Positions 29,087 to 44,658 of a stretch of DNA of 64,000 nt are shown here, piece by piece; within the stretch, counting starts at the first letter, position 1, and each line of letters starts with the position of its first letter. Under the pieces are notes generated by a model. It searched no databases. It had not been told where the DNA came from and saw only the letters and a program-made list of their open reading frames with translations. Position numbers and translations under genes: made by a program. The stretch is taken from positions 62,001 to 126,000 of the IMG/VR virus record IMGVR_UViG_3300009093_000035, one strand, 5' to 3'.

Positions 29087-30115
29087 CTACTCGTCGTATT
29101 CCTGAAGGGCCTGGATGAGGAGCCCGTTCGCGACCGCGTTCAGCTGGTCCGTAGCGAGACGAACCTCGCTCACCTCGATCGGGAAGCGCTTCCGCTTCTT
29201 CTCGAAGACCGAGTTGAAGAACTCCAGGAAGCCCTCCGGCTTCGAGGTTCCGCCGGAGACGATGATGGGGATCGCCTTCGGGATCGCGAACTTCCCCTCG
29301 ATCGACTTGAACTGGAGGGCGATCTGGTCGAGGACGTACTCGACGAGGTTCTTGTAGTAGAAGGTGACCGCTTCCTGCTCCCGACCGACGGGCTTCCTCA
29401 GGTCGATCCCCTTCTCCTTCATGGCGCAGATCCGAGCCGCCGTTGATCCGATCGACTTCGCGGCGCCGTTGTCGATCCAATCGCCTCCGCGAGCGACCGA
29501 GAAGGAGAGACCCTCGACGGTAGTGACAGCCAACGAGACGTTCGTCATGCCGCTCCCGAACGAGAGAGCGATCCCGGAGAAGCCTTCCTTCGCGGTCTCG
29601 GCGTAGATGATCGCGAGGGCCTCGTTCCCGGCATGGGCCGTGTACCCGCACTCGGTGACGATCCGGTCGAAGACCCCCTTGTGGTACACGACATCGCGAC
29701 CGGGCTGATCGACGGGAGCCGCTGGGATCGAGAAGAAGCAGTGCTCCCCCTTCGCCTTCGGATCTCCGAGAACGTTCTTCACGAGAAGACCGAGGACCGA
29801 GAGCGAGTCGATCTCGGTCGAGGAAACGAGACCCCCCGAGAGCGGACGGCGAGCCTCCTTCCCGAAGAGATTCGCCATGTCGAGGGCCGCGTCCCCGAGA
29901 ACGAGGATCTCATCGTCCCTCTCGACGTACGAAACGTTCGAGAGCTTCAACATCTTCTTCGCGTCGGAGGGCATGTCGAGGAACGCGTCGCGCATCCGAG
30001 ACGTGTCGATTCCCTTCGCGCTCTTCCGAGCCGAAACGAGGTTCATCGTCCCGACGTCGAGACCGACCCCGAGGTACTGAGCCGTCTTCTCCGCTGCCGC
30101 CTGCTTCTCAGCCAT
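29087..30115 (-). CDS. Actin/Hsp70-fold ATPase (MreB/FtsA/EutJ-like), 342 aa
   Basis: Phosphate-1 GLDVGTMN, connect-1 NEALA, phosphate-2 LSFGSGMT, GGDWID, adenosine IIVSGGTS, connect-2 AVANG, all in the correct order and spacing. Confidence 0.85.
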   Translation of the reverse strand: MAEKQAAAEKTAQYLGVGLDVGTMNLVSARKSAKGIDTSRMRDAFLDMPSDAKKMLKLSNVSYVERDDEILVLGDAALDMANLFGKEARRPLSGGLVSSTEIDSLSVLGLLVKNVLGDPKAKGEHCFFSIPAAPVDQPGRDVVYHKGVFDRIVTECGYTAHAGNEALAIIYAETAKEGFSGIALSFGSGMTNVSLAVTTVEGLSFSVARGGDWIDNGAAKSIGSTAARICAMKEKGIDLRKPVGREQEAVTFYYKNLVEYVLDQIALQFKSIEGKFAIPKAIPIIVSGGTSKPEGFLEFFNSVFEKKRKRFPIEVSEVRLATDQLNAVANGLLIQALQEYDE

Positions 30116-30833
30116 GGTTCTTGTCCTTCTTCTTTCGGGCGTTCCGGAGGGCCGCTCCCGCTTCGTCTACGCTACCGGTCTCGGTGACCGCCTTGTTGGT
30201 CTGAATGTCCTGACTCCCGTCCGGAACAATGTTCGTGGGGATGAACATCTCGTCGGGGGGAGCGTCGAGTGGAGATCGAGAATCACGTTCCGTTGAGACC
30301 GTCACGACTCGATCGAACCGGACCTCCTTCAACGCCTCTTTCACCGCATCGGCTACGGCTGTGGCGATCTCCTCCGTGTTGACCTTCGTAGCCGGTACCA
30401 TCCCCTCGAAAGGCTTCAACTTCTCCGAGAGAACCCGCTCGAAGGACCTCAACTGCTCCCCGAGCTTCTGGACCTCAGTCGAAAGACTCGACACGATCTT
30501 GAGGACGAGCGTCTGATCGGTTGGAACCGGAGCGGGAGCTTCGGGTTGAGGCGGAGGAGGAAGGCCAGGGTGGACCGCCGCACGACTCGCTGCCCTCAGA
30601 TTCGGACTCATCCGAGCGGTTGAGACAGGTAGGGATTCCGGCTTGATGGTGCCCCTCATGATCTTCACCCCCACCACACCCTGAGACTTCAACGACTCCA
30701 GGTCCCTCGACTTCGAGATCGCTGAAAGGGTAGTTCGAAGCCGAGTCCCCTTCGCCATCCGTAGATCGAGGTCCAGGATGTGGGCGGAGTCGCCCAGACA
30801 CACCAGTTCTACTTCTTCGCCGGGGGGGATCAT
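30108..30833 (-). CDS. Hypothetical protein, overlapping the start of the actin-like gene
   Basis: 241-aa ORF overlapping both neighbours; Pro-rich linker and coiled-coil-like segment. Confidence 0.65.
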   Translation of the reverse strand: MIPPGEEVELVCLGDSAHILDLDLRMAKGTRLRTTLSAISKSRDLESLKSQGVVGVKIMRGTIKPESLPVSTARMSPNLRAASRAAVHPGLPPPPQPEAPAPVPTDQTLVLKIVSSLSTEVQKLGEQLRSFERVLSEKLKPFEGMVPATKVNTEEIATAVADAVKEALKEVRFDRVVTVSTERDSRSPLDAPPDEMFIPTNIVPDGSQDIQTNKAVTETGSVDEAGAALRNARKKKDKNHG

Positions 30834-33201: not shown

Positions 33202-34683
33202 TCAGCCGTTCGGAAGGACCGGCAGGCCCTTCTTCGGCTTCGCCGGAACCGGAGGCGAGTAGACCCCGATCTTGAAGTCAGGCATACGGAGCGCCTTCGC
33301 AGAGCCGTACAACTCCGAGCCGCACCGCGCCTTCCCCGGCTCTTCCTTGTTGTCATCCGAACAGGAGAGACAACCCGTCGGCGGGCACTCCTCGACCTCG
33401 GTGAACGGAGCGCCCGGGGTCTTCCGAGTGAACATCGGAACGCGATGCCCATGGCACTGGTCGGCGGTTAGGAACTCCTTCCCGATCGATACGCCGGTCT
33501 TGTTGATAACCTCTCCCGCCTCATTCCGGACCATCTTGTACTCGTAGCACGTCGCGTACGTGAGACCGAGTCGCTTCGCCGCCGCCTGATAGAGACGATG
33601 ACCGACGATCCGATACTCCTCGGCGATCGTCTTCTGGCCCCCGATGTTCTCCGTGAACAGGCTCTCGAAGACCTTCCCGCGCTCGTCCCCGAAGCGAGAC
33701 TGAATACGCTTCACCATCGCCGGAGCCCAAGAGTAACCGGCCTCGACGAACTTCACGATGACGTGGTCGGCCCCGGCCGCCCTCAGCATCTCGAAGATCT
33801 CGATCACACCCGTATGGTCCACGACACCGGGAAGGATCGGATTGACCTGGATGGAGACGTAGATTCCGCGCTTCTTCAGCTCGCGGATGTCGTCCATGTG
33901 CTCTTCGAGAGAAGCCGCCCCCGGAGAGAGCTTCTTCCAATCCTTCGGGTTCGCCGTGTTGATCGACTTCTGGGCGTAGCTGTACGGGTTCTTCTGGAGC
34001 ATATCGATCGCCCAGCCCGGATACCGGAGACGCGAAAGGAAGAAGATCGGAAGACCCGCGTCCACGAACGCCTGAGCGCCATGCTGGGTGTTGTGGTAGT
34101 AGTTCTCCAAGGGGAGGAACGGATCCGTGAAGCTGGAGAAGTAGCCGGCCGCCGAGGTCTGCATCTTCCCCAGGGCCTTCTTAACCTGGTCCCCGTAGCC
34201 CATCGGGACGCTCACGAGCCCGGAGCCTCGGTAGCCCTTGAAACCGGAGTTGATGTAGCAGAAGGCGCAGCCCACCGTACAGAAGCCTCCGTACGGCTGG
34301 GTGAGGATCGCGTCCGTGAAGCACGGACGGTCTCGAACCCCCTTCGGTTCGGTCTTCGCCTTGTACCAACCCTGGAGCGGGCGCATCGCGTCGATACGGA
34401 TGTGTGGGATCGGATCGAGGAAGACCTGAAGGACGTGCTTGTCTTCGTCCTTCGCGCCCCGGACCATCCCGATCCTCATCTTCCGGGACCGTAGGCCAGT
34501 CTCGGGCTCGACCTCGATGTCCCCCGCTACGTCCTTCGGCTCGGGACGCATGAAGAAGTCGTAGGCCTTCCTAGTGCTCTCCGCGACCCCGCCGGTAGCC
34601 AGCGCCACCTCGTCGGCGACCGCCTCTTCAGGGGTCTCTTCGTCGGCGTTGTTCTCATCCAGCCACGTCAGGATCTGGTCCAT
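33202..34683 (-). CDS. Radical SAM enzyme (SPL-like fold), 493 aa
   Basis: QPYGGFCTVGCAFCY (CxxxCxxC), SFTDPF, VQVNPILPG-type motifs; extra C-terminal Cys cluster (QCHG ... ECPPTGCLSC ... RCG). Confidence 0.88.
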   Translation of the reverse strand: MDQILTWLDENNADEETPEEAVADEVALATGGVAESTRKAYDFFMRPEPKDVAGDIEVEPETGLRSRKMRIGMVRGAKDEDKHVLQVFLDPIPHIRIDAMRPLQGWYKAKTEPKGVRDRPCFTDAILTQPYGGFCTVGCAFCYINSGFKGYRGSGLVSVPMGYGDQVKKALGKMQTSAAGYFSSFTDPFLPLENYYHNTQHGAQAFVDAGLPIFFLSRLRYPGWAIDMLQKNPYSYAQKSINTANPKDWKKLSPGAASLEEHMDDIRELKKRGIYVSIQVNPILPGVVDHTGVIEIFEMLRAAGADHVIVKFVEAGYSWAPAMVKRIQSRFGDERGKVFESLFTENIGGQKTIAEEYRIVGHRLYQAAAKRLGLTYATCYEYKMVRNEAGEVINKTGVSIGKEFLTADQCHGHRVPMFTRKTPGAPFTEVEECPPTGCLSCSDDNKEEPGKARCGSELYGSAKALRMPDFKIGVYSPPVPAKPKKGLPVLPNG

Positions 34684-34718
34684 CGAGTTCTCCTAGAGCG
34701 ACACCACGAATAGGGCCT

Positions 34719-35657
34719 TCATTGACCACACAGAAACACACGACCTTCGTCTCGGTAGATGGTCTTATGACCTTGACGTACCCCGGTCCAGTCGTTGAAC
34801 TCCCCCAACCACTCTTTGGGGAAGACTCGCGCTCGCGCTTTCCAGAAGGGGGACGTCTCGACCACATCACTCTGAAACGGAATTCCAGCTTGTCGAGCCG
34901 GAAGATGGGTCATCTGAAGATCGATGTCATGACCACAATAGTAGTGGCCCTTGCACAGAGAGTTGAAGTCGCACAAGGCCGTCTCCAACTGATCGAGCCC
35001 GGAGAAGGCTACCCCGGCCGTCCGAGAATCTTCGAGGAGAGCCCTCTGGAGCGAGAGATTTGTCGCGCACTCTTTCCAGGACTGTCCGGTGAGACGAACC
35101 ATCCCAGGGATCGGACCCGCGGTCTCCGACCCACCTCCGACCCCTAGGTCTGAGGCCGTGATCGGAAAGTCGTGGACGTGAGCGAGTAGGTCTGCGAGCT
35201 TGTACGAGGACCAGGGACCCGCGTGGGGGATCTTCTGGAACCCCTCGCGAAGCGAGTCCCACCCTTCCGGTCCGCCGGCCTTCGTCAGCCCTTCCAACCA
35301 AGAGGAGAGGTTCCCTCCCGAGGCCTCCAGAACCTTCTCCAGATGAGCCAGAGATAGGAGGTTGCCACGGAAACCTCAACGCTCTGTCCCCGTGGAGAGT
35401 CCTTGAACCTTCTCAGGAGACGGCAACGCCGGGTCTGGGTACAAGTCCCAAACCCGGCTCGCCGAGCCCAAAGAGTACCACGTCACGTAGAGGAGCGTCC
35501 GCCAGAGAGACCTCTCTTTGTCGAGGCCTTCGGCTTGGTAGATCTCCTTCAGCAGCGGGTACGTCGGATCGAGATCTCCTGAGGAGAGCTGGCCGTTCGC
35601 GAAGATACAGAAATCCGCGAAGAGCTGCTTCGCCTCAGGAGCTATCGCTTCCGTCAT
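34719..35657 (-). pseudogene. Amino-acid:DNA transferase (ADDT / aGPT-Pplase2 family) interrupted by one in-frame TGA at 35376-35378
   Basis: ORFs 35376..35657 and 34719..35297 share a frame with no other stop between them. Combined they read GDLDPTY ... WRTLLY ... TGTER*GFRG ... GPWSSYKLADLL ... GP ... LETALCDF ... GHYYCGHDID. Confidence 0.8.
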
Positions 35658-35667
35658 CCAGCGTACG

Positions 35668-38136
35668 TTACGCTGCGACGGGAGGCGTGGTCGAGTAGTG
35701 CTCGGACTTCACGTACACGGTGATCACGAGACCATTCGGAAGAACGAAGAACGTCCCCTCTTCCTTCTCGGCCTTCGTGAGCTTCGCGTCCGGGAACTTC
35801 GTCGTGAACTGCTCGGAGGTGTAGGCGATCGCGTCGAGCGAGTCCGGCACGAGACCCGTCGCCCCGACGTAGAACGCGAGGGGACGGATCCGGTCGTAGA
35901 ACGACTCCACGACGCCTTCGATCCCTTCCAGCGCGTCGTGAACCGCCGCGACAGCCTCGTCACGATCCGCCCCGCGGACCGTCTTCATGAAGTCCTTCCC
36001 GTCGAAGTCCGGGATCAGCTTCATGGTCTTCTGGAGGTCGTCCTCCGACCCGAGACCGAGGAAGCCCTCGTAGATCGGGTACGAGATCGTGTCCACGTAG
36101 TTGAGCTGGGTCCGAGCGGAGAGCTTCTTCACCCCGGTCTTCGCACCGCGAGCGATCTGATCGAGAGTCGGCTTCTCCACTTCCTTCCCGAGGAACTCCA
36201 TGGTGAAGCGACGCTGGAGGTACTCGTTCCCGGAACTGAGCTTCGTCACCGCGGTGAGGCTGGGGACACCGACGTCGATCTTGTACGAAAGACGCGTGTC
36301 GACCTTTCCTTCGGCGATCGCCTTCGCGAGGTCCGCGTACTCGGTCGTCATCGGAGGAGTGAAGTTGAGGGCCGGGCTGAGGTAGTGGGTCTTCAGCTCT
36401 GCGACCTGCTCCGTGGTGTACGAAGCCGACTCGCCCTTGAACATCCCTCCGAGGATCTTCGAGAGGACCGTCAGCTTCGCGAGGCCCACGACCTCGTCCG
36501 GCGAGATCGTGTCGAAGGACGTGTCGTACGCGATCAGCGGAAGATCCGAGAAGTCGATCACGAAGGGCTCGTTCGGCTTGTACTCGCCGGTGACGACGCC
36601 GAGATCCTTCAGCTCGCGGAACGTCCGCTTGTCCGAGGTACGGAAGATGAGCTGGTTGACGTTCAGCGACCCGTCCCCCACGAGCGTGTAGTTGTTGAAG
36701 GAACGGAGCTTCGAGAGGTCCACCCCGGAGACCGAGGCGACCTTCGTCGTCCCGCCGACCGGGTAGATGTCGATCTCTTGGGAGACGAGCATGTTGACCG
36801 TCGCGTTGTTGCGATTGATCTCGAACTTGTTGACCGAGACCCACTCCTCGCCCGCGTTGCGGTAACGCTGCTCGTACTTCGGGGGAGTGACCGTCCCGTC
36901 TTCCTCACGTGCTCCCGGGATGCGCTTCACTCCACGGCGCTTGTAGCCCGCGAGGAGCGTCTTCAGGTTGACCGAGAGCGACGAGGAGCCCCGGTCGAGG
37001 ACCGAGAGAACCGCGAGAACCGAAGCCCCGTTCGACGGAAGACCGAAGTCGACCGAACGATCGTACTTCATCCCGCCCGCGAGAACGTCCTCGATCGCCG
37101 CTGCAAACGCCGCGACGTCCGACGAGACGAGAGCCTTCGCGTGCTTCTTCAGGAGGTCGCCGTTCTTCGAGGCCACGACCGCGTACTTCGCGGCGTTGAG
37201 GCGGCCTTCGCTGATCGCGGCGCGGGCGTACGCGAGGATCGCGACGGCCGAATTCGTGTCGAGAGTCTCCGGAGCCTTCAGCTTCTCGTAGGTCTCCTCG
37301 GAGATCTCGAAGTAGCGGAAGGCCACTCGATCGTCCTTCTCGGAGAGACCGCGAACCACGATCCCCTCCGTCGACCCGAGGACCTTCCGAGCCGCGACCG
37401 AGGCGAACGTGACGTAGTCGGCGTCGCCGATCCCCGCCTCCAGGGCCGGAGACATCGAGCCCGCGAGGAGCGCTGTCGCCCCGTAGAGGGCGTCGTAGAC
37501 CTGCTTCACGTTCTTCGCCTGGATGCACGAACCCGAGAGGGCGTTCGAGATCGAGGAGAGGAGGTTGAAGTCGCAGTAGTCGCGGTAGGCGATCGTGTTG
37601 ACGAAGACGTTCGGGTGCTTCTTCAGCGCCGTCGTGACGGCGGCGATCGCCGCGCTCTCTGCCGTCGGGGACCGATCGTTCGCCCATCCGTCCGTGTGAA
37701 GCGAGACGCACGTCGTCTCCTTGTCGTCGATCAGGGTCTCCGCCATCACGAGGCCCTGGGAGATGCAGGTCATCGCCGTCGCCCGAATCGAGCGGATCTC
37801 CTTCAGCTGAGGGCTGTTCGCCTTCATGACGTCCGCGACCGTCGCTCCCTTGAAGTGGAGCTTCACGTCGCCCGAGGACGAGTAGGTGATGAGAGAGACC
37901 TTCAGGGTCGGGTCGTCGAACTCACCGAGGGTCAGGAGCTTCTCGACCATCGACTTCAGATCCGCCAAGTCGTAGGCCATCGAGCCCGACCGGTCGATCA
38001 CGAAGATGTGATGGGCGGGGTTCTTCTTGGCGATCGCGGCCTGAGACGAGAAGTCGTCCCGCTCGACACGGAAGAACGTCAGGGGCTTCCCTGAATAGGA
38101 GCGAAGCGCGAACTTGGTTGTCTCGGATTTGGACAT
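35668..38136 (-). CDS. vWA-domain protein (822 aa)
   Basis: HHIFVIDRSGSM MIDAS motif, AMT and LHTDG downstream; large uncharacterised C-terminal region. Confidence 0.85.
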   Translation of the reverse strand: MSKSETTKFALRSYSGKPLTFFRVERDDFSSQAAIAKKNPAHHIFVIDRSGSMAYDLADLKSMVEKLLTLGEFDDPTLKVSLITYSSSGDVKLHFKGATVADVMKANSPQLKEIRSIRATAMTCISQGLVMAETLIDDKETTCVSLHTDGWANDRSPTAESAAIAAVTTALKKHPNVFVNTIAYRDYCDFNLLSSISNALSGSCIQAKNVKQVYDALYGATALLAGSMSPALEAGIGDADYVTFASVAARKVLGSTEGIVVRGLSEKDDRVAFRYFEISEETYEKLKAPETLDTNSAVAILAYARAAISEGRLNAAKYAVVASKNGDLLKKHAKALVSSDVAAFAAAIEDVLAGGMKYDRSVDFGLPSNGASVLAVLSVLDRGSSSLSVNLKTLLAGYKRRGVKRIPGAREEDGTVTPPKYEQRYRNAGEEWVSVNKFEINRNNATVNMLVSQEIDIYPVGGTTKVASVSGVDLSKLRSFNNYTLVGDGSLNVNQLIFRTSDKRTFRELKDLGVVTGEYKPNEPFVIDFSDLPLIAYDTSFDTISPDEVVGLAKLTVLSKILGGMFKGESASYTTEQVAELKTHYLSPALNFTPPMTTEYADLAKAIAEGKVDTRLSYKIDVGVPSLTAVTKLSSGNEYLQRRFTMEFLGKEVEKPTLDQIARGAKTGVKKLSARTQLNYVDTISYPIYEGFLGLGSEDDLQKTMKLIPDFDGKDFMKTVRGADRDEAVAAVHDALEGIEGVVESFYDRIRPLAFYVGATGLVPDSLDAIAYTSEQFTTKFPDAKLTKAEKEEGTFFVLPNGLVITVYVKSEHYSTTPPVAA

Positions 38137-38199: not shown

Positions 38200-38679
38200 T
38201 CAGCGAGACTTCTTCTTCAAGTAGTCGGAAGCGCCCTTTGCCGTGAGCTTCGCGTTCTCCGCTACTTCCTTCGCGGCCTCCTGAATCAAGTTCTCGATAT
38301 CCGAGACCTTCTCGTCGGCGTCCAACAAGGTGTCGACGACCTCTTGAGCCTTCTTCGAGTTCATGTCCGCGAGAGCTTCCATCATGTCGCCATACAGCTC
38401 ATCGAGTTCCCCCTGGCCGACCTCGGCGGTCTTCCCAAGAAGCGGAAGGATCTCCGAACGGATCTCCGGCTTCTCGTGAGCGAGACGAATCAGGGATCGG
38501 CGAAGAGAGGAATGCTTGTTCACTTGGATAGCCCGTTCTTGGTTCTCGGCTTTGTCTTTGGAGGGATGGCGTCCCAACAGCCGGTCCCCGTCGCTCGTGT
38601 AGAGACACCACTTCTGCTCGTCGGCGGGACGGTCGTCCTGATCGGAGGGACGACACTCATGGATGACCGCCTTCTTCAT
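38200..38679 (-). CDS. IRLAH-tag protein (internal tag), 159 aa
   Basis: Small N-domain KWCLYTSDGDRLLGRH..., then LRRSLIRLAHEKPEIRSEILPLLGKTA, then an acidic helix. Confidence 0.8.
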   Translation of the reverse strand: MKKAVIHECRPSDQDDRPADEQKWCLYTSDGDRLLGRHPSKDKAENQERAIQVNKHSSLRRSLIRLAHEKPEIRSEILPLLGKTAEVGQGELDELYGDMMEALADMNSKKAQEVVDTLLDADEKVSDIENLIQEAAKEVAENAKLTAKGASDYLKKKSR

Positions 38680-38682
38680 CGC

Positions 38683-39123
38683 TCAGTCGATGAAGCCGTA
38701 GTCCCGGCCGCGACCGGAATCGTTGGACCAACCCCACCGACCCTCTTCCGGGTCGAAGCCGACGCGACCGATCGACTTGCCGTTCGTGCCGCCGTTCGGA
38801 TGGACGTAGTCCCAAGAAAGAGACCCGCCGAGGCCGCCCTGGGCGTCCGACCACCACTCGATCGAGATCGAGATCTCCGAGAAGAGAGACGAGAAGCCCT
38901 TCGGCACCTCGACCTTGACTGAGTTCTCGTTGAGGTTCGACCACTTCACCGGAGCGTCGATCTTCTTGAGAAGAACGTTGATCGCTTCGAGGGCCTTCTT
39001 CTTCGCCTCGTCGTCGAGCTGAGGAAGCCGACCGGCCTTCTTCTCCAGAAGGGGAAGGATCTCCGAGCGGATCTCGGGGTTCGCGTGGGCGAGACGAATC
39101 AGGGAACGACGGAGGGATGCCAT
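38683..39123 (-). CDS. IRLAH-tag protein, 146 aa
   Basis: MASLRRSLIRLAHANPEIRSEILPLLEKKAG. Confidence 0.8.
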   Translation of the reverse strand: MASLRRSLIRLAHANPEIRSEILPLLEKKAGRLPQLDDEAKKKALEAINVLLKKIDAPVKWSNLNENSVKVEVPKGFSSLFSEISISIEWWSDAQGGLGGSLSWDYVHPNGGTNGKSIGRVGFDPEEGRWGWSNDSGRGRDYGFID

Positions 39124-39156
39124 GCCTCCGCCGTTTCAAAGAGAATCCACCGAGGG

Positions 39157-39759
39157 CTACTCCGCGGCGATCCCGTAGAACAAGAAGCCGACCGCCGAGC
39201 CCTGGAGCACGATGTCTCCACGGACCTCCCAAGAGCCGAACCCGAACTTGTCCTTCTCGCCCGTGTCTCGGACACTTCGGATCTTCCCCGGAAGAGCGCC
39301 GCTCGCCCGAGCCCAAGTCCCGAAGGCGGATCGAGCCTCCTCGTCCGAATCGGCTCGAAGCACGACCTTCTTCGCCTTCGTCTCAGCTCGGCCGGAGACG
39401 ACTGGGATCGCAAACGCCGGACCCGACTTCGGGTTGTGTCTCACGTCCTGATTGGCGTAGGTCTTTGCCTCCGCAAGGGTCATGCCCTTCGCCCTGAGGA
39501 CGAACCCCTTCCCGGCCTTCTCCAGGATCGTCCCCGAGTACCCGCCCTCGGAATCGTCGTCACGATACGACCGAACGTCGTTCTCCGCGTCCTGTACGAG
39601 CTTCTCGAAGACCTTCTTCGGATCCGTCCCCTCGCCGTACTCCTGGAACTCGGCGCCGCCTGCGGTCTTCGAGAGGAGCGAAAGAAGTGCCGGTCGTAGC
39701 TCGGGCTTCGAGTGCGCGAGACGGATGAGCTTTCGACGCAGCTTGAGGTCGGGGGTCAC
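39157..39759 (-). CDS. IRLAH-tag protein, 200 aa
   Basis: LRRKLIRLAHSKPELRPALLSLLSKTAG. Confidence 0.8.
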   Translation of the reverse strand: MTPDLKLRRKLIRLAHSKPELRPALLSLLSKTAGGAEFQEYGEGTDPKKVFEKLVQDAENDVRSYRDDDSEGGYSGTILEKAGKGFVLRAKGMTLAEAKTYANQDVRHNPKSGPAFAIPVVSGRAETKAKKVVLRADSDEEARSAFGTWARASGALPGKIRSVRDTGEKDKFGFGSWEVRGDIVLQGSAVGFLFYGIAAE

Positions 39760-39793
39760 AGACCTCCGACCTCAAAGGAACTCCACCGAAGGT

Positions 39794-40492
39794 TCAGGGC
39801 TGAGGCGTCGTCGGCTTCTGGAGCCGTTCGGAGACCTCGATGATCTGGTGGGCCGGAATCCAGCGCGTATCCCGCTCCAGAGGCGGGCGAACGTTTCGAC
39901 CAGTGTTCTGGTTCATCGTCCAGAACACCCAGCGAAGACGGTCCTCCTCTTCGCGCGAGCGGAACTTCTCCTTCACGACCCCGACCTTCCCGGTCTTGAA
40001 GTTCACCCCGTTCACGGTCTCTTCGCGAACCGGGCCGTCCTTGTACTGGATCCGAACCTTGTCGCCCGGCTTCAGGTTCAGCTCTTCGAGCTTCTTCCGA
40101 CCCGGCTCCGCAGCGTCGTCCTTCGCGTCCATCCGGTCCTGACGACGGTCGAGAAGCTCGGCCTTCTCCTTCTCGGTCTTCGCCTTGTCGGCCTTTCCGA
40201 CGTAGCGGATCACCTTCGCGTTCGCGTCGTAGCGGGAACCCTTCGCGGGGAAGCGAAGGTCCCCCGCCGACGAAGAGAGCAGAAGTTCGGCGTTCCCGGT
40301 TCGCTTCGTCGTGACGCTGACGATCGTAGCGGGAATCCAACCCTTCCGCGTCTGGACTTCGACGGAGTCCCCTTCGTGGAAGTACCCGTCCGAAGGCGCA
40401 GCTTCCTTCAAGATCGGGATGAGGTGCTCGCGAAGCTCGGGCTTCTCGTGAGCGAGACGGATCGTCTTCGAGCGGAGTTCGTCGTCGTTCAT
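39794..40492 (-). CDS. IRLAH-tag protein with two SH3/KOW-like repeats, 232 aa
   Basis: LRSKTIRLAHEKPELREHLIPILKEAA; GDSVEV ... WIPATIV and LKPGDKVRIQY segments. Confidence 0.8.
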   Translation of the reverse strand: MNDDELRSKTIRLAHEKPELREHLIPILKEAAPSDGYFHEGDSVEVQTRKGWIPATIVSVTTKRTGNAELLLSSSAGDLRFPAKGSRYDANAKVIRYVGKADKAKTEKEKAELLDRRQDRMDAKDDAAEPGRKKLEELNLKPGDKVRIQYKDGPVREETVNGVNFKTGKVGVVKEKFRSREEEDRLRWVFWTMNQNTGRNVRPPLERDTRWIPAHQIIEVSERLQKPTTPQP

Positions 40493-43324: not shown

Positions 43325-43543
43325 CTATTCGTTCAGGAAGATCCGGATGGAGCACCGAGGACACCCGACGTACTTCCGGTCTGACGAGACCATGTAGAAG
43401 GGATCCTCTTCGGTATGGATCTCCGAACGACCGAAGGTGAACTCGGCCTTACATCGACCGCAGGTCGCCCGACCGATCTGAAGCTCCCCGCAGCGAGAGG
43501 CGCGAGACTGACGACGAGCTTTCCGTTGGGAGCGCCCGCTCAC
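43325..43543 (-). CDS. Small Zn-finger-like protein
   Basis: CGRC ... CPRC; GTGA-coupled to the ligase stop. Confidence 0.55.
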   Translation of the reverse strand: MSGRSQRKARRQSRASRCGELQIGRATCGRCKAEFTFGRSEIHTEEDPFYMVSSDRKYVGCPRCSIRIFLNE

Positions 43544-44658
43544 GCCTTCTCCAGGTACCGATTCCCGACGAGCTTCAAGATCACGCGGCCCAACTGAGGG
43601 TCGATCCGCTCGACCTCGGGTTTGACCACGACGCCTTCGGCGTAGTGGGGCTTGAATTTTCCCCCGCTGAGGACACTGTCGGCTTCAGCGAGAGCTTCGA
43701 TCCCCTCGGCGAGGAAAGGTCCGCGATAGACGACAGGAACGCGAGACAGACCGTCCCGACCGTCGCCTCCGAACAGATCCCGAGCGTCCATCCACTTCCG
43801 GTCCCCGAGGTAGACGTCAAAGACGAGGAACGCGGGAAACCCCTGTGGGATCCCGTAGTGCATCTTCTTCGTCGACCGGAAGACCTCGCCGTAGAGGATC
43901 TTGTCTTCGTTTGCTCGGCACCACGTCTCGATCCACGGGTTGGCTCTCAGAGCCGCCCAGAAGACCGACGGGTTCTGGCTCCGGTCCCAGGCCTTCAGGT
44001 CGAGATCTCCGCCCATCTTCCCGGTCCCGGTGTCGATCGTGACGATTCCTGGCTCGACGCTCTCGTCCGGAGGACGCTTCCATTCCGTCCGAGACCCCAC
44101 CCACATCCGACCTCCGCGGAAGGCGTAGCGGGCGCTCTCCCCGTTGATCTTCTCCGTGACGATCACCGGTTCCCCTGGAGTGAAGAGGTCTCGCCACTTC
44201 CTCTTCGTGGCCCTCTCCCCTCCGCGGAAGTTCTCCATGTCGTAGGCGGAGAGATGGGCGAGAGAATCGATCGGACGCTCGCCTTCCTGGCTCTGGATGT
44301 TCGCGTATGGATCGTAGCGGACGATCCCGAGGCGCTCCATGACGTTGTCCCCTTCGGAGACCTTGTCCTTCAACGCCCCGAGCTTCATCAGGAGCCCCTG
44401 GGAGTAGATCCCACGGAACTTCCGGACCTTGATTCGGCGATCGTCGGTCGGTAGGTAGCTCCAGAGAGACGAGAAGGGATGCTCGTTCCCCGGCAAGACG
44501 TAGTCCGGCTCGACGTAGATCGCGAGGTCTCCCGTCGCGAAGTCTTCCGTGCGGACGACGCACGTGTACCCGTCGATCTCGACAAGGCCCAGGGTATCCG
44601 CGGCGGGGTGCTTCTTCACCTCACCGAGTCGAATCACGAAGACGCCGTGGGTACTCAT
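43540..44658 (-). CDS. RNA ligase, Rnl2/DRB0094-like, with N-terminal OB (tRNA-binding-like) module
   Basis: HPAADTL N-domain; motif I TEKINGES; YGEV (III), FDV (IIIa), EGVVVK (IV), ILKLV (V). Confidence 0.88.
   Translation of the reverse strand: MSTHGVFVIRLGEVKKHPAADTLGLVEIDGYTCVVRTEDFATGDLAIYVEPDYVLPGNEHPFSSLWSYLPTDDRRIKVRKFRGIYSQGLLMKLGALKDKVSEGDNVMERLGIVRYDPYANIQSQEGERPIDSLAHLSAYDMENFRGGERATKRKWRDLFTPGEPVIVTEKINGESARYAFRGGRMWVGSRTEWKRPPDESVEPGIVTIDTGTGKMGGDLDLKAWDRSQNPSVFWAALRANPWIETWCRANEDKILYGEVFRSTKKMHYGIPQGFPAFLVFDVYLGDRKWMDARDLFGGDGRDGLSRVPVVYRGPFLAEGIEALAEADSVLSGGKFKPHYAEGVVVKPEVERIDPQLGRVILKLVGNRYLEKA

What the first reader, a model, noticed from the sequence alone, without database searches (positions are those of the whole stretch)
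35298..35390. Single in-frame TGA in the conserved ER(R) motif of the amino-acid:DNA transferase
Seen directly: the minus strand reads ACG GGG ACA GAG CGT TGA GGT TTC CGT GGC AAC, and the frame stays open for the remaining ~219 codons. The family motif as I recall it is G-x-E-R-R-x-x-R, so TGA sits where Arg (CGA, one C->T change) is expected. TGA is the true stop of many other genes here, so genome-wide recoding is unlikely. Alternatives: a recent nonsense mutation switching off modification, a population variant or sequencing error, or regulated read-through.
Basis: partly seen in the sequence, partly recalled or inferred. Interest (0 to 1): 0.6.

Follow-up and report, generated by a model that had tools for sequence, protein, structure and literature searches.

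The report
Stop codon private to one assembly
The stop codon inside this giant soil phage's DNA-modifying enzyme gene appears in only one assembly; every other assembly reads arginine there, so it is an assembly error or minority variant, not recoding.

Summary
A 312-codon minus-strand gene (window 35657..34719) of the amino-acid:DNA transferase family (Pfam ADDT, PF18724) has one in-frame TGA at 35378..35376, codon 94. It sits on the second Arg of the T-G-x-E-R-R-x-F-R loop. All 35 aligned homologues have Arg there. It aligns with Arg94 of the solved PaMx11 gp46 enzyme, where R94A abolishes DNA binding.

The stop is private to the window's own record (JGI Ga0105240_10000045). A second JGI assembly (Ga0207695_10000111) differs at only 2 of 26,750 compared bases and reads CGA. 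So do Logan's 73.6-kb contig from the probable source run and contigs from two other rhizosphere samples. The intact protein is on record on four contigs. The 93-residue truncated product is on record only on the window's own contig. The nearest relative (81% identity) also uses CGA.

TGA is the commonest true stop here (158 of 251 ORFs). No opal-suppressor or Sec tRNA was found, and no SECIS-like fold. Both gene halves show dN/dS of about 0.1.

Verdict: the phage's gene is intact. The TGA is a one-base C>T assembly error or a minority nonsense allele, not recoding, read-through or a naturally split gene. Only raw reads can separate error from minority allele.

The parts
34719..35657 (-). Amino-acid:DNA transferase gene (ADDT, aGPT-Pplase clade 2). 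It has 312 codons plus a TGA stop and is interrupted in this record only by the TGA at codon 94.
   Evidence: The alignment shows the family's invariant residues present: D28, D30, Y33, E92, R93, R97, W149, K153, E225, T226, C229. The sister assembly and Logan call it as one 312-residue gene.
35376..35378 (-). In-frame TGA at codon 94. Base 35378 is A on the + strand (T on the gene strand). Every other assembly has G there (C on the gene strand), giving CGA = Arg.
   Evidence: In one search, the X1, X2 and X3 contigs all read G at 35378. In one search, the sister JGI contig reads C on the gene strand. In one search, L005 and the 81% relative L002 both have CGA.
35379..35657 (-). The 93-codon N-terminal piece, called as a separate gene only in the window's own record.
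   Evidence: In one search, this exact 93-residue product is on record on one contig only, Ga0105240_10000045. One search gives phrog_6364 positions 8-70.
34719..35375 (-). The 218-codon C-terminal piece. It carries the GPW/Lys motif and the E-T-x-x-C catalytic motif. No ATG, GTG or TTG follows the TGA until the TTG at 35297.
33202..34683 (-). Radical SAM enzyme immediately downstream, 61% identical to Pseudomonas phage M6 gp53. It carries the same CTVGCAFC Fe-S motif.
   Evidence: [quoted passage not shown]
35668..38136 (-). An 822-residue VWA-domain protein immediately upstream. A homologue lies close to the ADDT cluster in the relative L014.
   Evidence: In L002 the upstream gene is cut off and was not identified.

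Best explanation
The phage carries an ordinary, intact amino-acid:DNA transferase with CGA (Arg94) in its Arg-rich DNA-binding loop. The TGA in the window is a single C>T difference found only in this one assembly of the source metagenome. It is either a consensus or assembly error, or a nonsense allele carried by part of the population that one assembler happened to follow. I cannot separate these two; I put them at roughly even odds. It is not a decoding signal.

Shown here: the T is private to this record; the intact gene exists on four other contigs; the position is an invariant Arg.

Inferred by homology: the enzyme acts like M6 gp51 and PaMx11 gp46. A catalytic Cys (C229 here) would attack C6 of 5-phosphomethyl-dU in DNA. 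Phosphate leaves, and the amino group of an amino acid, probably glycine, adds to the exocyclic methylene to give N-alpha-glycinyl-thymidine. The adjacent radical SAM enzyme would then isomerise this product to C-alpha-GlyT.
For:: Logan's 73,658-base contig of run X1, the probable source (depth 26.6), matches the 5,001 bases laid with one difference, 35378 A>G. Contigs of X2 (749 bases, depth 5.4) and X3 (depth 2.8) also read G.

JGI Ga0207695_10000111 and _10000132 differ from the window's record at 2 of 26,750 bases. One of the two is this site, and it reads CGA.

the intact 312-residue protein is on record on four contigs: Logan SRR6056503, two contigs of 0.2-1 Mb, and a 2.2-kb contig of a third JGI sample.

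the 93-residue truncated product is on record on the window's record only.

a slightly different strain (L005) and the 81% relative (L002) both use CGA.

35 of 35 homologues have Arg at this column.

the column aligns to Arg94 of PaMx11 gp46 (PDB 8z2m). There, R94A abolishes DNA binding (PMC11472151).

dN/dS against L002 is 0.108 for the N half and 0.147 for the C half.

TGA ends 158 of 251 ORFs.

none of the 45 tRNA genes in the record reads UGA.
Against: All the runs are held only as contigs, which drop minor variants. The frequency of the T allele in the reads is therefore unknown. De Bruijn-graph assemblers normally output only k-mers that are present in reads, so the T was probably seen in at least a few reads. 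That favours a real sub-population allele over a pure artefact. I could not prove that the two JGI assemblies come from the same reads. If they come from different samples, the T allele could be the majority in the window's sample.
Confidence: 0.88

Rival explanations
1. A genuine recent nonsense mutation has knocked out the transferase in the phage lineage this record represents. The stop is fixed or in the majority in that sample, and thymidine hypermodification is switched off.
For: CGA>TGA is a single transition. Graph assemblers rarely invent bases, so the T probably exists in some reads (inference). Apart from this base the gene is identical to the intact copy, as expected for a very young mutation.
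Against: Three other assemblies of near-identical DNA read CGA, and so do two further samples. The truncated product is on record on no other contig. Both halves are under purifying selection in the lineage. The radical SAM partner is intact.
Confidence: 0.1
2. Programmed decoding of the TGA: read-through, selenocysteine insertion, or a suppressor tRNA yields the full-length enzyme.
For: The frame stays open for 218 codons after the stop, and both halves are conserved.
Against: No relative has TGA at this site: all 35 aligned homologues have Arg, and the nearest relatives at DNA level read CGA. The near-identical sister contig reads CGA. The 46 RNA genes of the record (45 tRNA and one tmRNA) include no opal-suppressor or Sec tRNA. 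The 85 nt downstream fold no better than shuffled sequence (z = -0.81). TGA is the main stop, including this gene's own stop. The site needs Arg (R94A abolishes DNA binding, PMC11472151), which UGA read-through would rarely supply.
Confidence: 0.01
3. The family is naturally split here into two genes whose products assemble.
For: None beyond the two open pieces.
Against: The 120 best homologues listed are single proteins of 253-326 residues. Almost all cover about 90% or more of the query; one 253-residue hit covers 73%. The only start codon after the stop is a TTG 27 codons downstream, so the R-F-R part of the loop would be lost. The length window of that search (172-546 residues) would hide short fragments, so rare split forms are not excluded.
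Confidence: 0.01

Closest known systems
Pseudomonas phage M6 gp51 (aGPT-Pplase clade 2, glycine:DNA transferase; PMC8989533)
   Same: The two align over their full length (21% identity, E 2e-6). M6 gp51 has G-H-E-R-R-H-Y-R opposite the window's G-T-E-R-X-G-F-R, and shares the GPW...K and E-T-x-L-C motifs. As in M6, a close homologue of the gp53 radical SAM isomerase lies nearby (61% identity).
   Different: The sequence is very divergent. tblastn against deposited phages finds actinophage homologues (33-35% identity) but not M6. No homologues of the M6 gp52 PLP decarboxylase, the gp54 kinase or the gp58 thymidylate-synthase-like protein were found in the 248.6-kb record.
Pseudomonas phage PaMx11 gp46 (PUGT), PDB 8z2m/8z2n (PMC11472151)
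   Same: The profile of this family hits the chain (E 4e-9). Asp24, Tyr47/51, Glu92, Arg94, Arg97, Trp146, Lys150, Glu243, Thr244 and Cys247 correspond to D28, Y, E92, codon 94, R97, W149, K153, E225, T226 and C229 here.
   Different: In PaMx11 the downstream partners are an FAD lyase and an acetyltransferase, not a radical SAM enzyme. The window's record has a stop at the position equivalent to Arg94.
Uncultured huge-phage contig L014 (JGI 3300032243, 265,895 bases), a gene cluster containing an ADDT
   Same: The ADDT is 54% identical, the radical SAM enzyme 74% and the VWA protein 56%. Both are large soil phages.
   Different: The relative has Tet_JBP, an AAA_18 kinase, ADDT, a PALP enzyme and the radical SAM enzyme in a row. 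The window has only VWA, ADDT and the radical SAM enzyme. Its record holds no homologue of the dioxygenase, the kinase or the PLP enzyme.

Membership tests
Amino-acid:DNA transferase (Pfam ADDT PF18724, aGPT-Pplase clade 2) | Match to the family profile above the curated cut-off | tested here: met
   27.9-28 bits against a cut-off of 26.2. The match is marginal and covers only profile positions 130-230. However, most of the 120 listed homologues carry PF18724, and the family profile hits the two solved transferases.
Amino-acid:DNA transferase (Pfam ADDT PF18724, aGPT-Pplase clade 2) | Essential catalytic Cys with a proximal Glu (E-T-x-x-C). Mutating either to Ala kills M6 gp51 and ViI gp247 (PMC8989533). 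| tested here: met
   E225, T226 and C229 are invariant in the 36-sequence alignment. They align to Glu243, Thr244 and Cys247 of 8z2m.
Amino-acid:DNA transferase (Pfam ADDT PF18724, aGPT-Pplase clade 2) | Arg-rich loop E-R-R-x-x-R (Glu92, Arg94, Arg97 in PaMx11 gp46) | tested here: inconclusive
   In the window's record the second Arg is replaced by TGA. In the sister assembly, the Logan contig and L005 the loop is complete.
Amino-acid:DNA transferase (Pfam ADDT PF18724, aGPT-Pplase clade 2) | GPW motif and Lys that hold the base and the amino acid (Trp146, Lys150) | tested here: met
   G147, W149 and K153 are invariant and aligned.
Amino-acid:DNA transferase (Pfam ADDT PF18724, aGPT-Pplase clade 2) | Genomic company of a 5-hmdU source and a 5-hmdU DNA kinase that makes the 5-PmdU substrate | tested here: inconclusive
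   None was found in the 248.6-kb record. But the genome is about 473 kb, and the other half could not be searched.
Amino-acid:DNA transferase (Pfam ADDT PF18724, aGPT-Pplase clade 2) | Transfer of an amino acid to 5-PmdU in DNA | not testable with these tools
   This needs the enzyme and LC-MS of nucleosides.
Programmed UGA recoding (selenocysteine or read-through) | The UGA is conserved at the site in relatives | tested here: not met
   35 of 35 homologues have Arg. The nearest relatives at DNA level have CGA.
Programmed UGA recoding (selenocysteine or read-through) | A decoding device: a SECIS-like hairpin after the UGA, or a tRNA that reads UGA | tested here: not met
   The downstream fold has z = -0.81 against shuffles. 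No tRNA-Sec or opal suppressor is among the 45 tRNA genes of the record. The other half of the genome was not seen.

The most novel reading that the evidence does not exclude
The T is a real nonsense allele at appreciable frequency in the wild population of this ~473-kb phage. Virions with and without thymidine hypermodification would then coexist in one rhizosphere sample, a natural on/off polymorphism of an anti-restriction DNA modification.
Probability: 0.35. Interest if true: 0.35.

Novelty: not a real feature. Interest (0 to 1): 0.12.

Why it matters
Read as a stop codon with a biological role, the finding does not hold up. It is a warning that single-base differences between assemblies of the same metagenome can look like recoding or pseudogenes. 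The underlying gene is still worth recording. A roughly 473-kb soil phage carries an M6-like pair: a glycine-type DNA transferase and a radical SAM isomerase. This extends that thymidine hypermodification chemistry to huge phages. In this phage the pair lacks the dioxygenase, kinase and PLP decarboxylase that flank it in a related huge phage.

Tried and rejected
Genome-wide TGA recoding is rejected. Under the standard code, 251 ORFs cover 91% of the record and 158 of them end in TGA. Reading TGA as sense only fuses genes.

Suppressor tRNA or Sec machinery is rejected. The record has 45 tRNA genes and a tmRNA, and none reads UGA.

A SECIS-like structure is rejected (z = -0.81).

I guessed from the coordinate offsets of the two JGI contigs that the genome is a ~249-kb circle. 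This was wrong. The record's end continues into a second 223,499-base contig, and an ENA contig of 472,929 bases carries the same gene.

Searching the sister record directly was not possible, because it is not held.

The pattern scan of JGI metagenomes and IMG/VR for either allele found only the two known JGI contigs.

The paper search for the sample and run identifiers found nothing.

A search for a Tet_JBP orthologue on the other half of the genome listed none on a contig of matching length among the best 120 hits.

Raw reads were not available. All four runs are held as contigs, so allele frequency could not be measured.

The read-through translation used X at the stop. The large representative-protein search, structure prediction and complex prediction were not needed and were not run.

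Full report
**What is in the sequence.** On the minus strand an ATG at window 35657 opens a frame that runs to a TGA at 34721..34719. Codon 94 of that frame is TGA, at 35378..35376, in the context GAG CGT TGA GGT TTC CGT. The upstream piece is 93 codons and the downstream piece 218 codons. Both pieces hit the same phage family, phrog_6364, at profile positions 8-70 and 126-260. The downstream piece also passes the Pfam cut-off for ADDT, PF18724, the amino-acid:DNA transferase family.

**What the position is.** The word search used the read-through translation with X at the stop. It returned 157 relatives, and the best 120 listed are single proteins of 253-326 residues. In an alignment with 35 of them, the loop reads T-G-x-E-R-R-x-F-R. 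T89, G90, E92, R93 and R97 are invariant, and all 35 relatives have Arg at the column of the stop.

A profile of that alignment hits two solved structures: 25qc, and 8z2m/8z2n, the PaMx11 gp46 glycinyltransferase. I counted along the printed alignment. The stop falls on Arg94 of gp46, flanked by Glu92 and Arg97.

The structural paper reports that Arg94 binds a backbone phosphate, helps force the target base into the pocket, and that R94A abolishes DNA binding. Glu92 lines the pocket for the leaving phosphate (PMC11472151).

The remaining catalytic set is present in the window's frame. This includes the Asp near the N-terminus, the GPW tryptophan, the following Lys, and E-T-x-x-C with the essential Cys (PMC8989533).

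**Is the genome recoded?** No. The window lies in a 248,579-base IMG/VR virus record. Under the standard code, 251 non-overlapping ORFs cover 91% of it, and 158 of them end in TGA. This gene's own terminator is also TGA. The record has 45 tRNA genes and a tmRNA, but none with an anticodon for UGA. The window itself has no tRNA genes. The RNA downstream of the stop folds no better than shuffled sequence.

**Is the stop reproducible?** This was the decisive test, and the stop fails it.

- Four public runs hold the stretch, all kept as Logan contigs.
- The probable source run X1 gives a 73,658-base contig at depth 26.6. It matches the window everywhere except one place, 35378, where it reads G instead of A. 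That gives CGA on the gene strand.
- Contigs from two other rhizosphere samples, X2 and X3, carry a slightly different strain and also read G.

Looking up the neighbouring radical SAM protein by identity returned three contigs:

- the window's own record, JGI 3300009093 Ga0105240_10000045, with the transferase called as a 93-residue gene;
- a second JGI assembly, 3300025913 Ga0207695_10000111, with a 312-residue gene;
- the Logan contig of SRR6056503, also with a 312-residue gene.

The two JGI contigs differ at only two of 21,482 bases. One difference is this site, T against C on the gene strand. The other is an Ala/Ser change at window 30191. A further 5,268 bases at the record's end show no difference.

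The intact protein is on record on four contigs. The truncated 93-residue product is on record on the window's record alone. A third JGI sample (L005) and the nearest relative, at 81% identity (L002), both use CGA.

**What that means.** The phage's transferase gene is intact. The T is private to one assembly. The two remaining readings are:

- an assembly or consensus error;
- a nonsense allele carried by part of the population, which one assembler followed and the others did not.

Contigs cannot tell these apart, because they drop minor variants. De Bruijn-graph assemblers usually emit only words seen in reads, so I give a real sub-population allele about even odds with an artefact. Either way there has been no decay. 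The gene differs from the intact copy by that single base. Against the 81% relative, both halves show the same strong constraint, with dN/dS of 0.108 and 0.147. Synonymous divergence there is near saturation (dS about 1.04), so these ratios are rough.

Read-through, selenocysteine and a natural two-gene split are each contradicted by the CGA copies and the single-gene relatives.

**What the gene does (by homology).**

- *Downstream partner.* The gene at 34683..33202 is 61% identical at protein level to M6 gp53 and has the same CTVGCAFC cluster motif.
- *Known M6 pathway.* In M6, gp54 phosphorylates 5-hmdU in DNA. Then gp51, a clade 2 aGPT-Pplase, replaces the phosphate with glycine through a Cys-C6 adduct and an exocyclic methylene. 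The radical SAM enzyme gp53 moves the link from N-alpha to C-alpha. The PLP enzyme gp52 then decarboxylates to give 5-(2-aminoethyl)uridine (PMC8989533).
- *Similarity to gp51.* The window's transferase aligns with gp51 over its whole length at 21% identity. The E-R-R loop sits opposite the stop.
- *Prediction.* It keeps the Trp and Lys that hold glycine in the gp46 structure. I therefore predict a glycine:DNA transferase feeding the radical SAM isomerase. This step is inferred, not shown.

**Context that does not fit neatly.** A related huge-phage contig (L014, 265,895 bases) has Tet_JBP dioxygenase, an AAA_18 kinase, ADDT, a PALP enzyme and the radical SAM enzyme in a row, with the VWA protein nearby. 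The window has only VWA, ADDT and the radical SAM enzyme.

In the 248.6-kb record I found no homologue of any of the following, by Pfam search or by tblastn with the M6 and L014 proteins:

- the dioxygenase;
- the kinase;
- the PLP enzyme;
- a thymidylate-synthase-type hydroxymethylase.

The record is only about half the genome. Its end continues into a 223,499-base contig of the sister assembly, and an ENA contig of 472,929 bases carries the same genes. The missing steps may therefore lie in the unseen half. A search for Tet_JBP relatives listed none on a contig of matching length among the best 120 hits, which is weak evidence.

**Verdict.** The interpretation as a population variant or error is supported. 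Recoding and regulated read-through are not. Interest is low.

Noticed in passing
window 33202-38136; locus L014:6227-11485: A related huge phage has Tet_JBP, a kinase, ADDT, a PALP enzyme and the radical SAM enzyme in a row. The window's phage keeps only ADDT and the radical SAM enzyme, next to the VWA gene. Its 248.6-kb record holds no recognisable 5-hmdU source, 5-hmdU kinase or PLP decarboxylase. How the transferase's substrate is made here is therefore open.
   Followed up: partly
whole record G000:C1; sister contigs Ga0207695_10000111 and Ga0207695_10000132; ENA ERZ27252312: The phage genome is about 473 kb. The record's end runs on into a second 223,499-base contig, and an ENA contig of 472,929 bases carries the same genes. 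This agrees with the 56% completeness estimate.
   Followed up: partly
window 38200-40492 (four tandem genes); also G000:C1 near 83.9, 111.4, 141.4, 187.0, 188.4 and 206.5 kb: An N-terminal module of about 30 residues (L-I-R-L-A-H-x-x-P-E-[IL]-R...) heads at least ten otherwise different small genes. Four of them lie in tandem just upstream of the VWA gene. Function unknown.
   Followed up: no
G000:C1:188442-199553 and 224337-224412 (outside the window): The record carries 45 tRNA genes, 44 of them in one array together with a tmRNA gene (tag ANDSSYDQLAQAA). No tRNA-Trp gene and no tRNA that reads a stop codon is among them.
   Followed up: no
window 30191: This is the only other difference between the window's record and the sister assembly in 26.7 kb. 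It is G in the window against T in the sister on the gene strand, giving Ala215 against Ser215 in the 241-residue ORF 30108-30833.
   Followed up: partly
window 29087-30115 and 43540-44658: An actin-like gene (Pfam Volactin) and an RNA ligase gene (PF09414, PF21189), according to the precomputed Pfam hits on the called genes.
   Followed up: no
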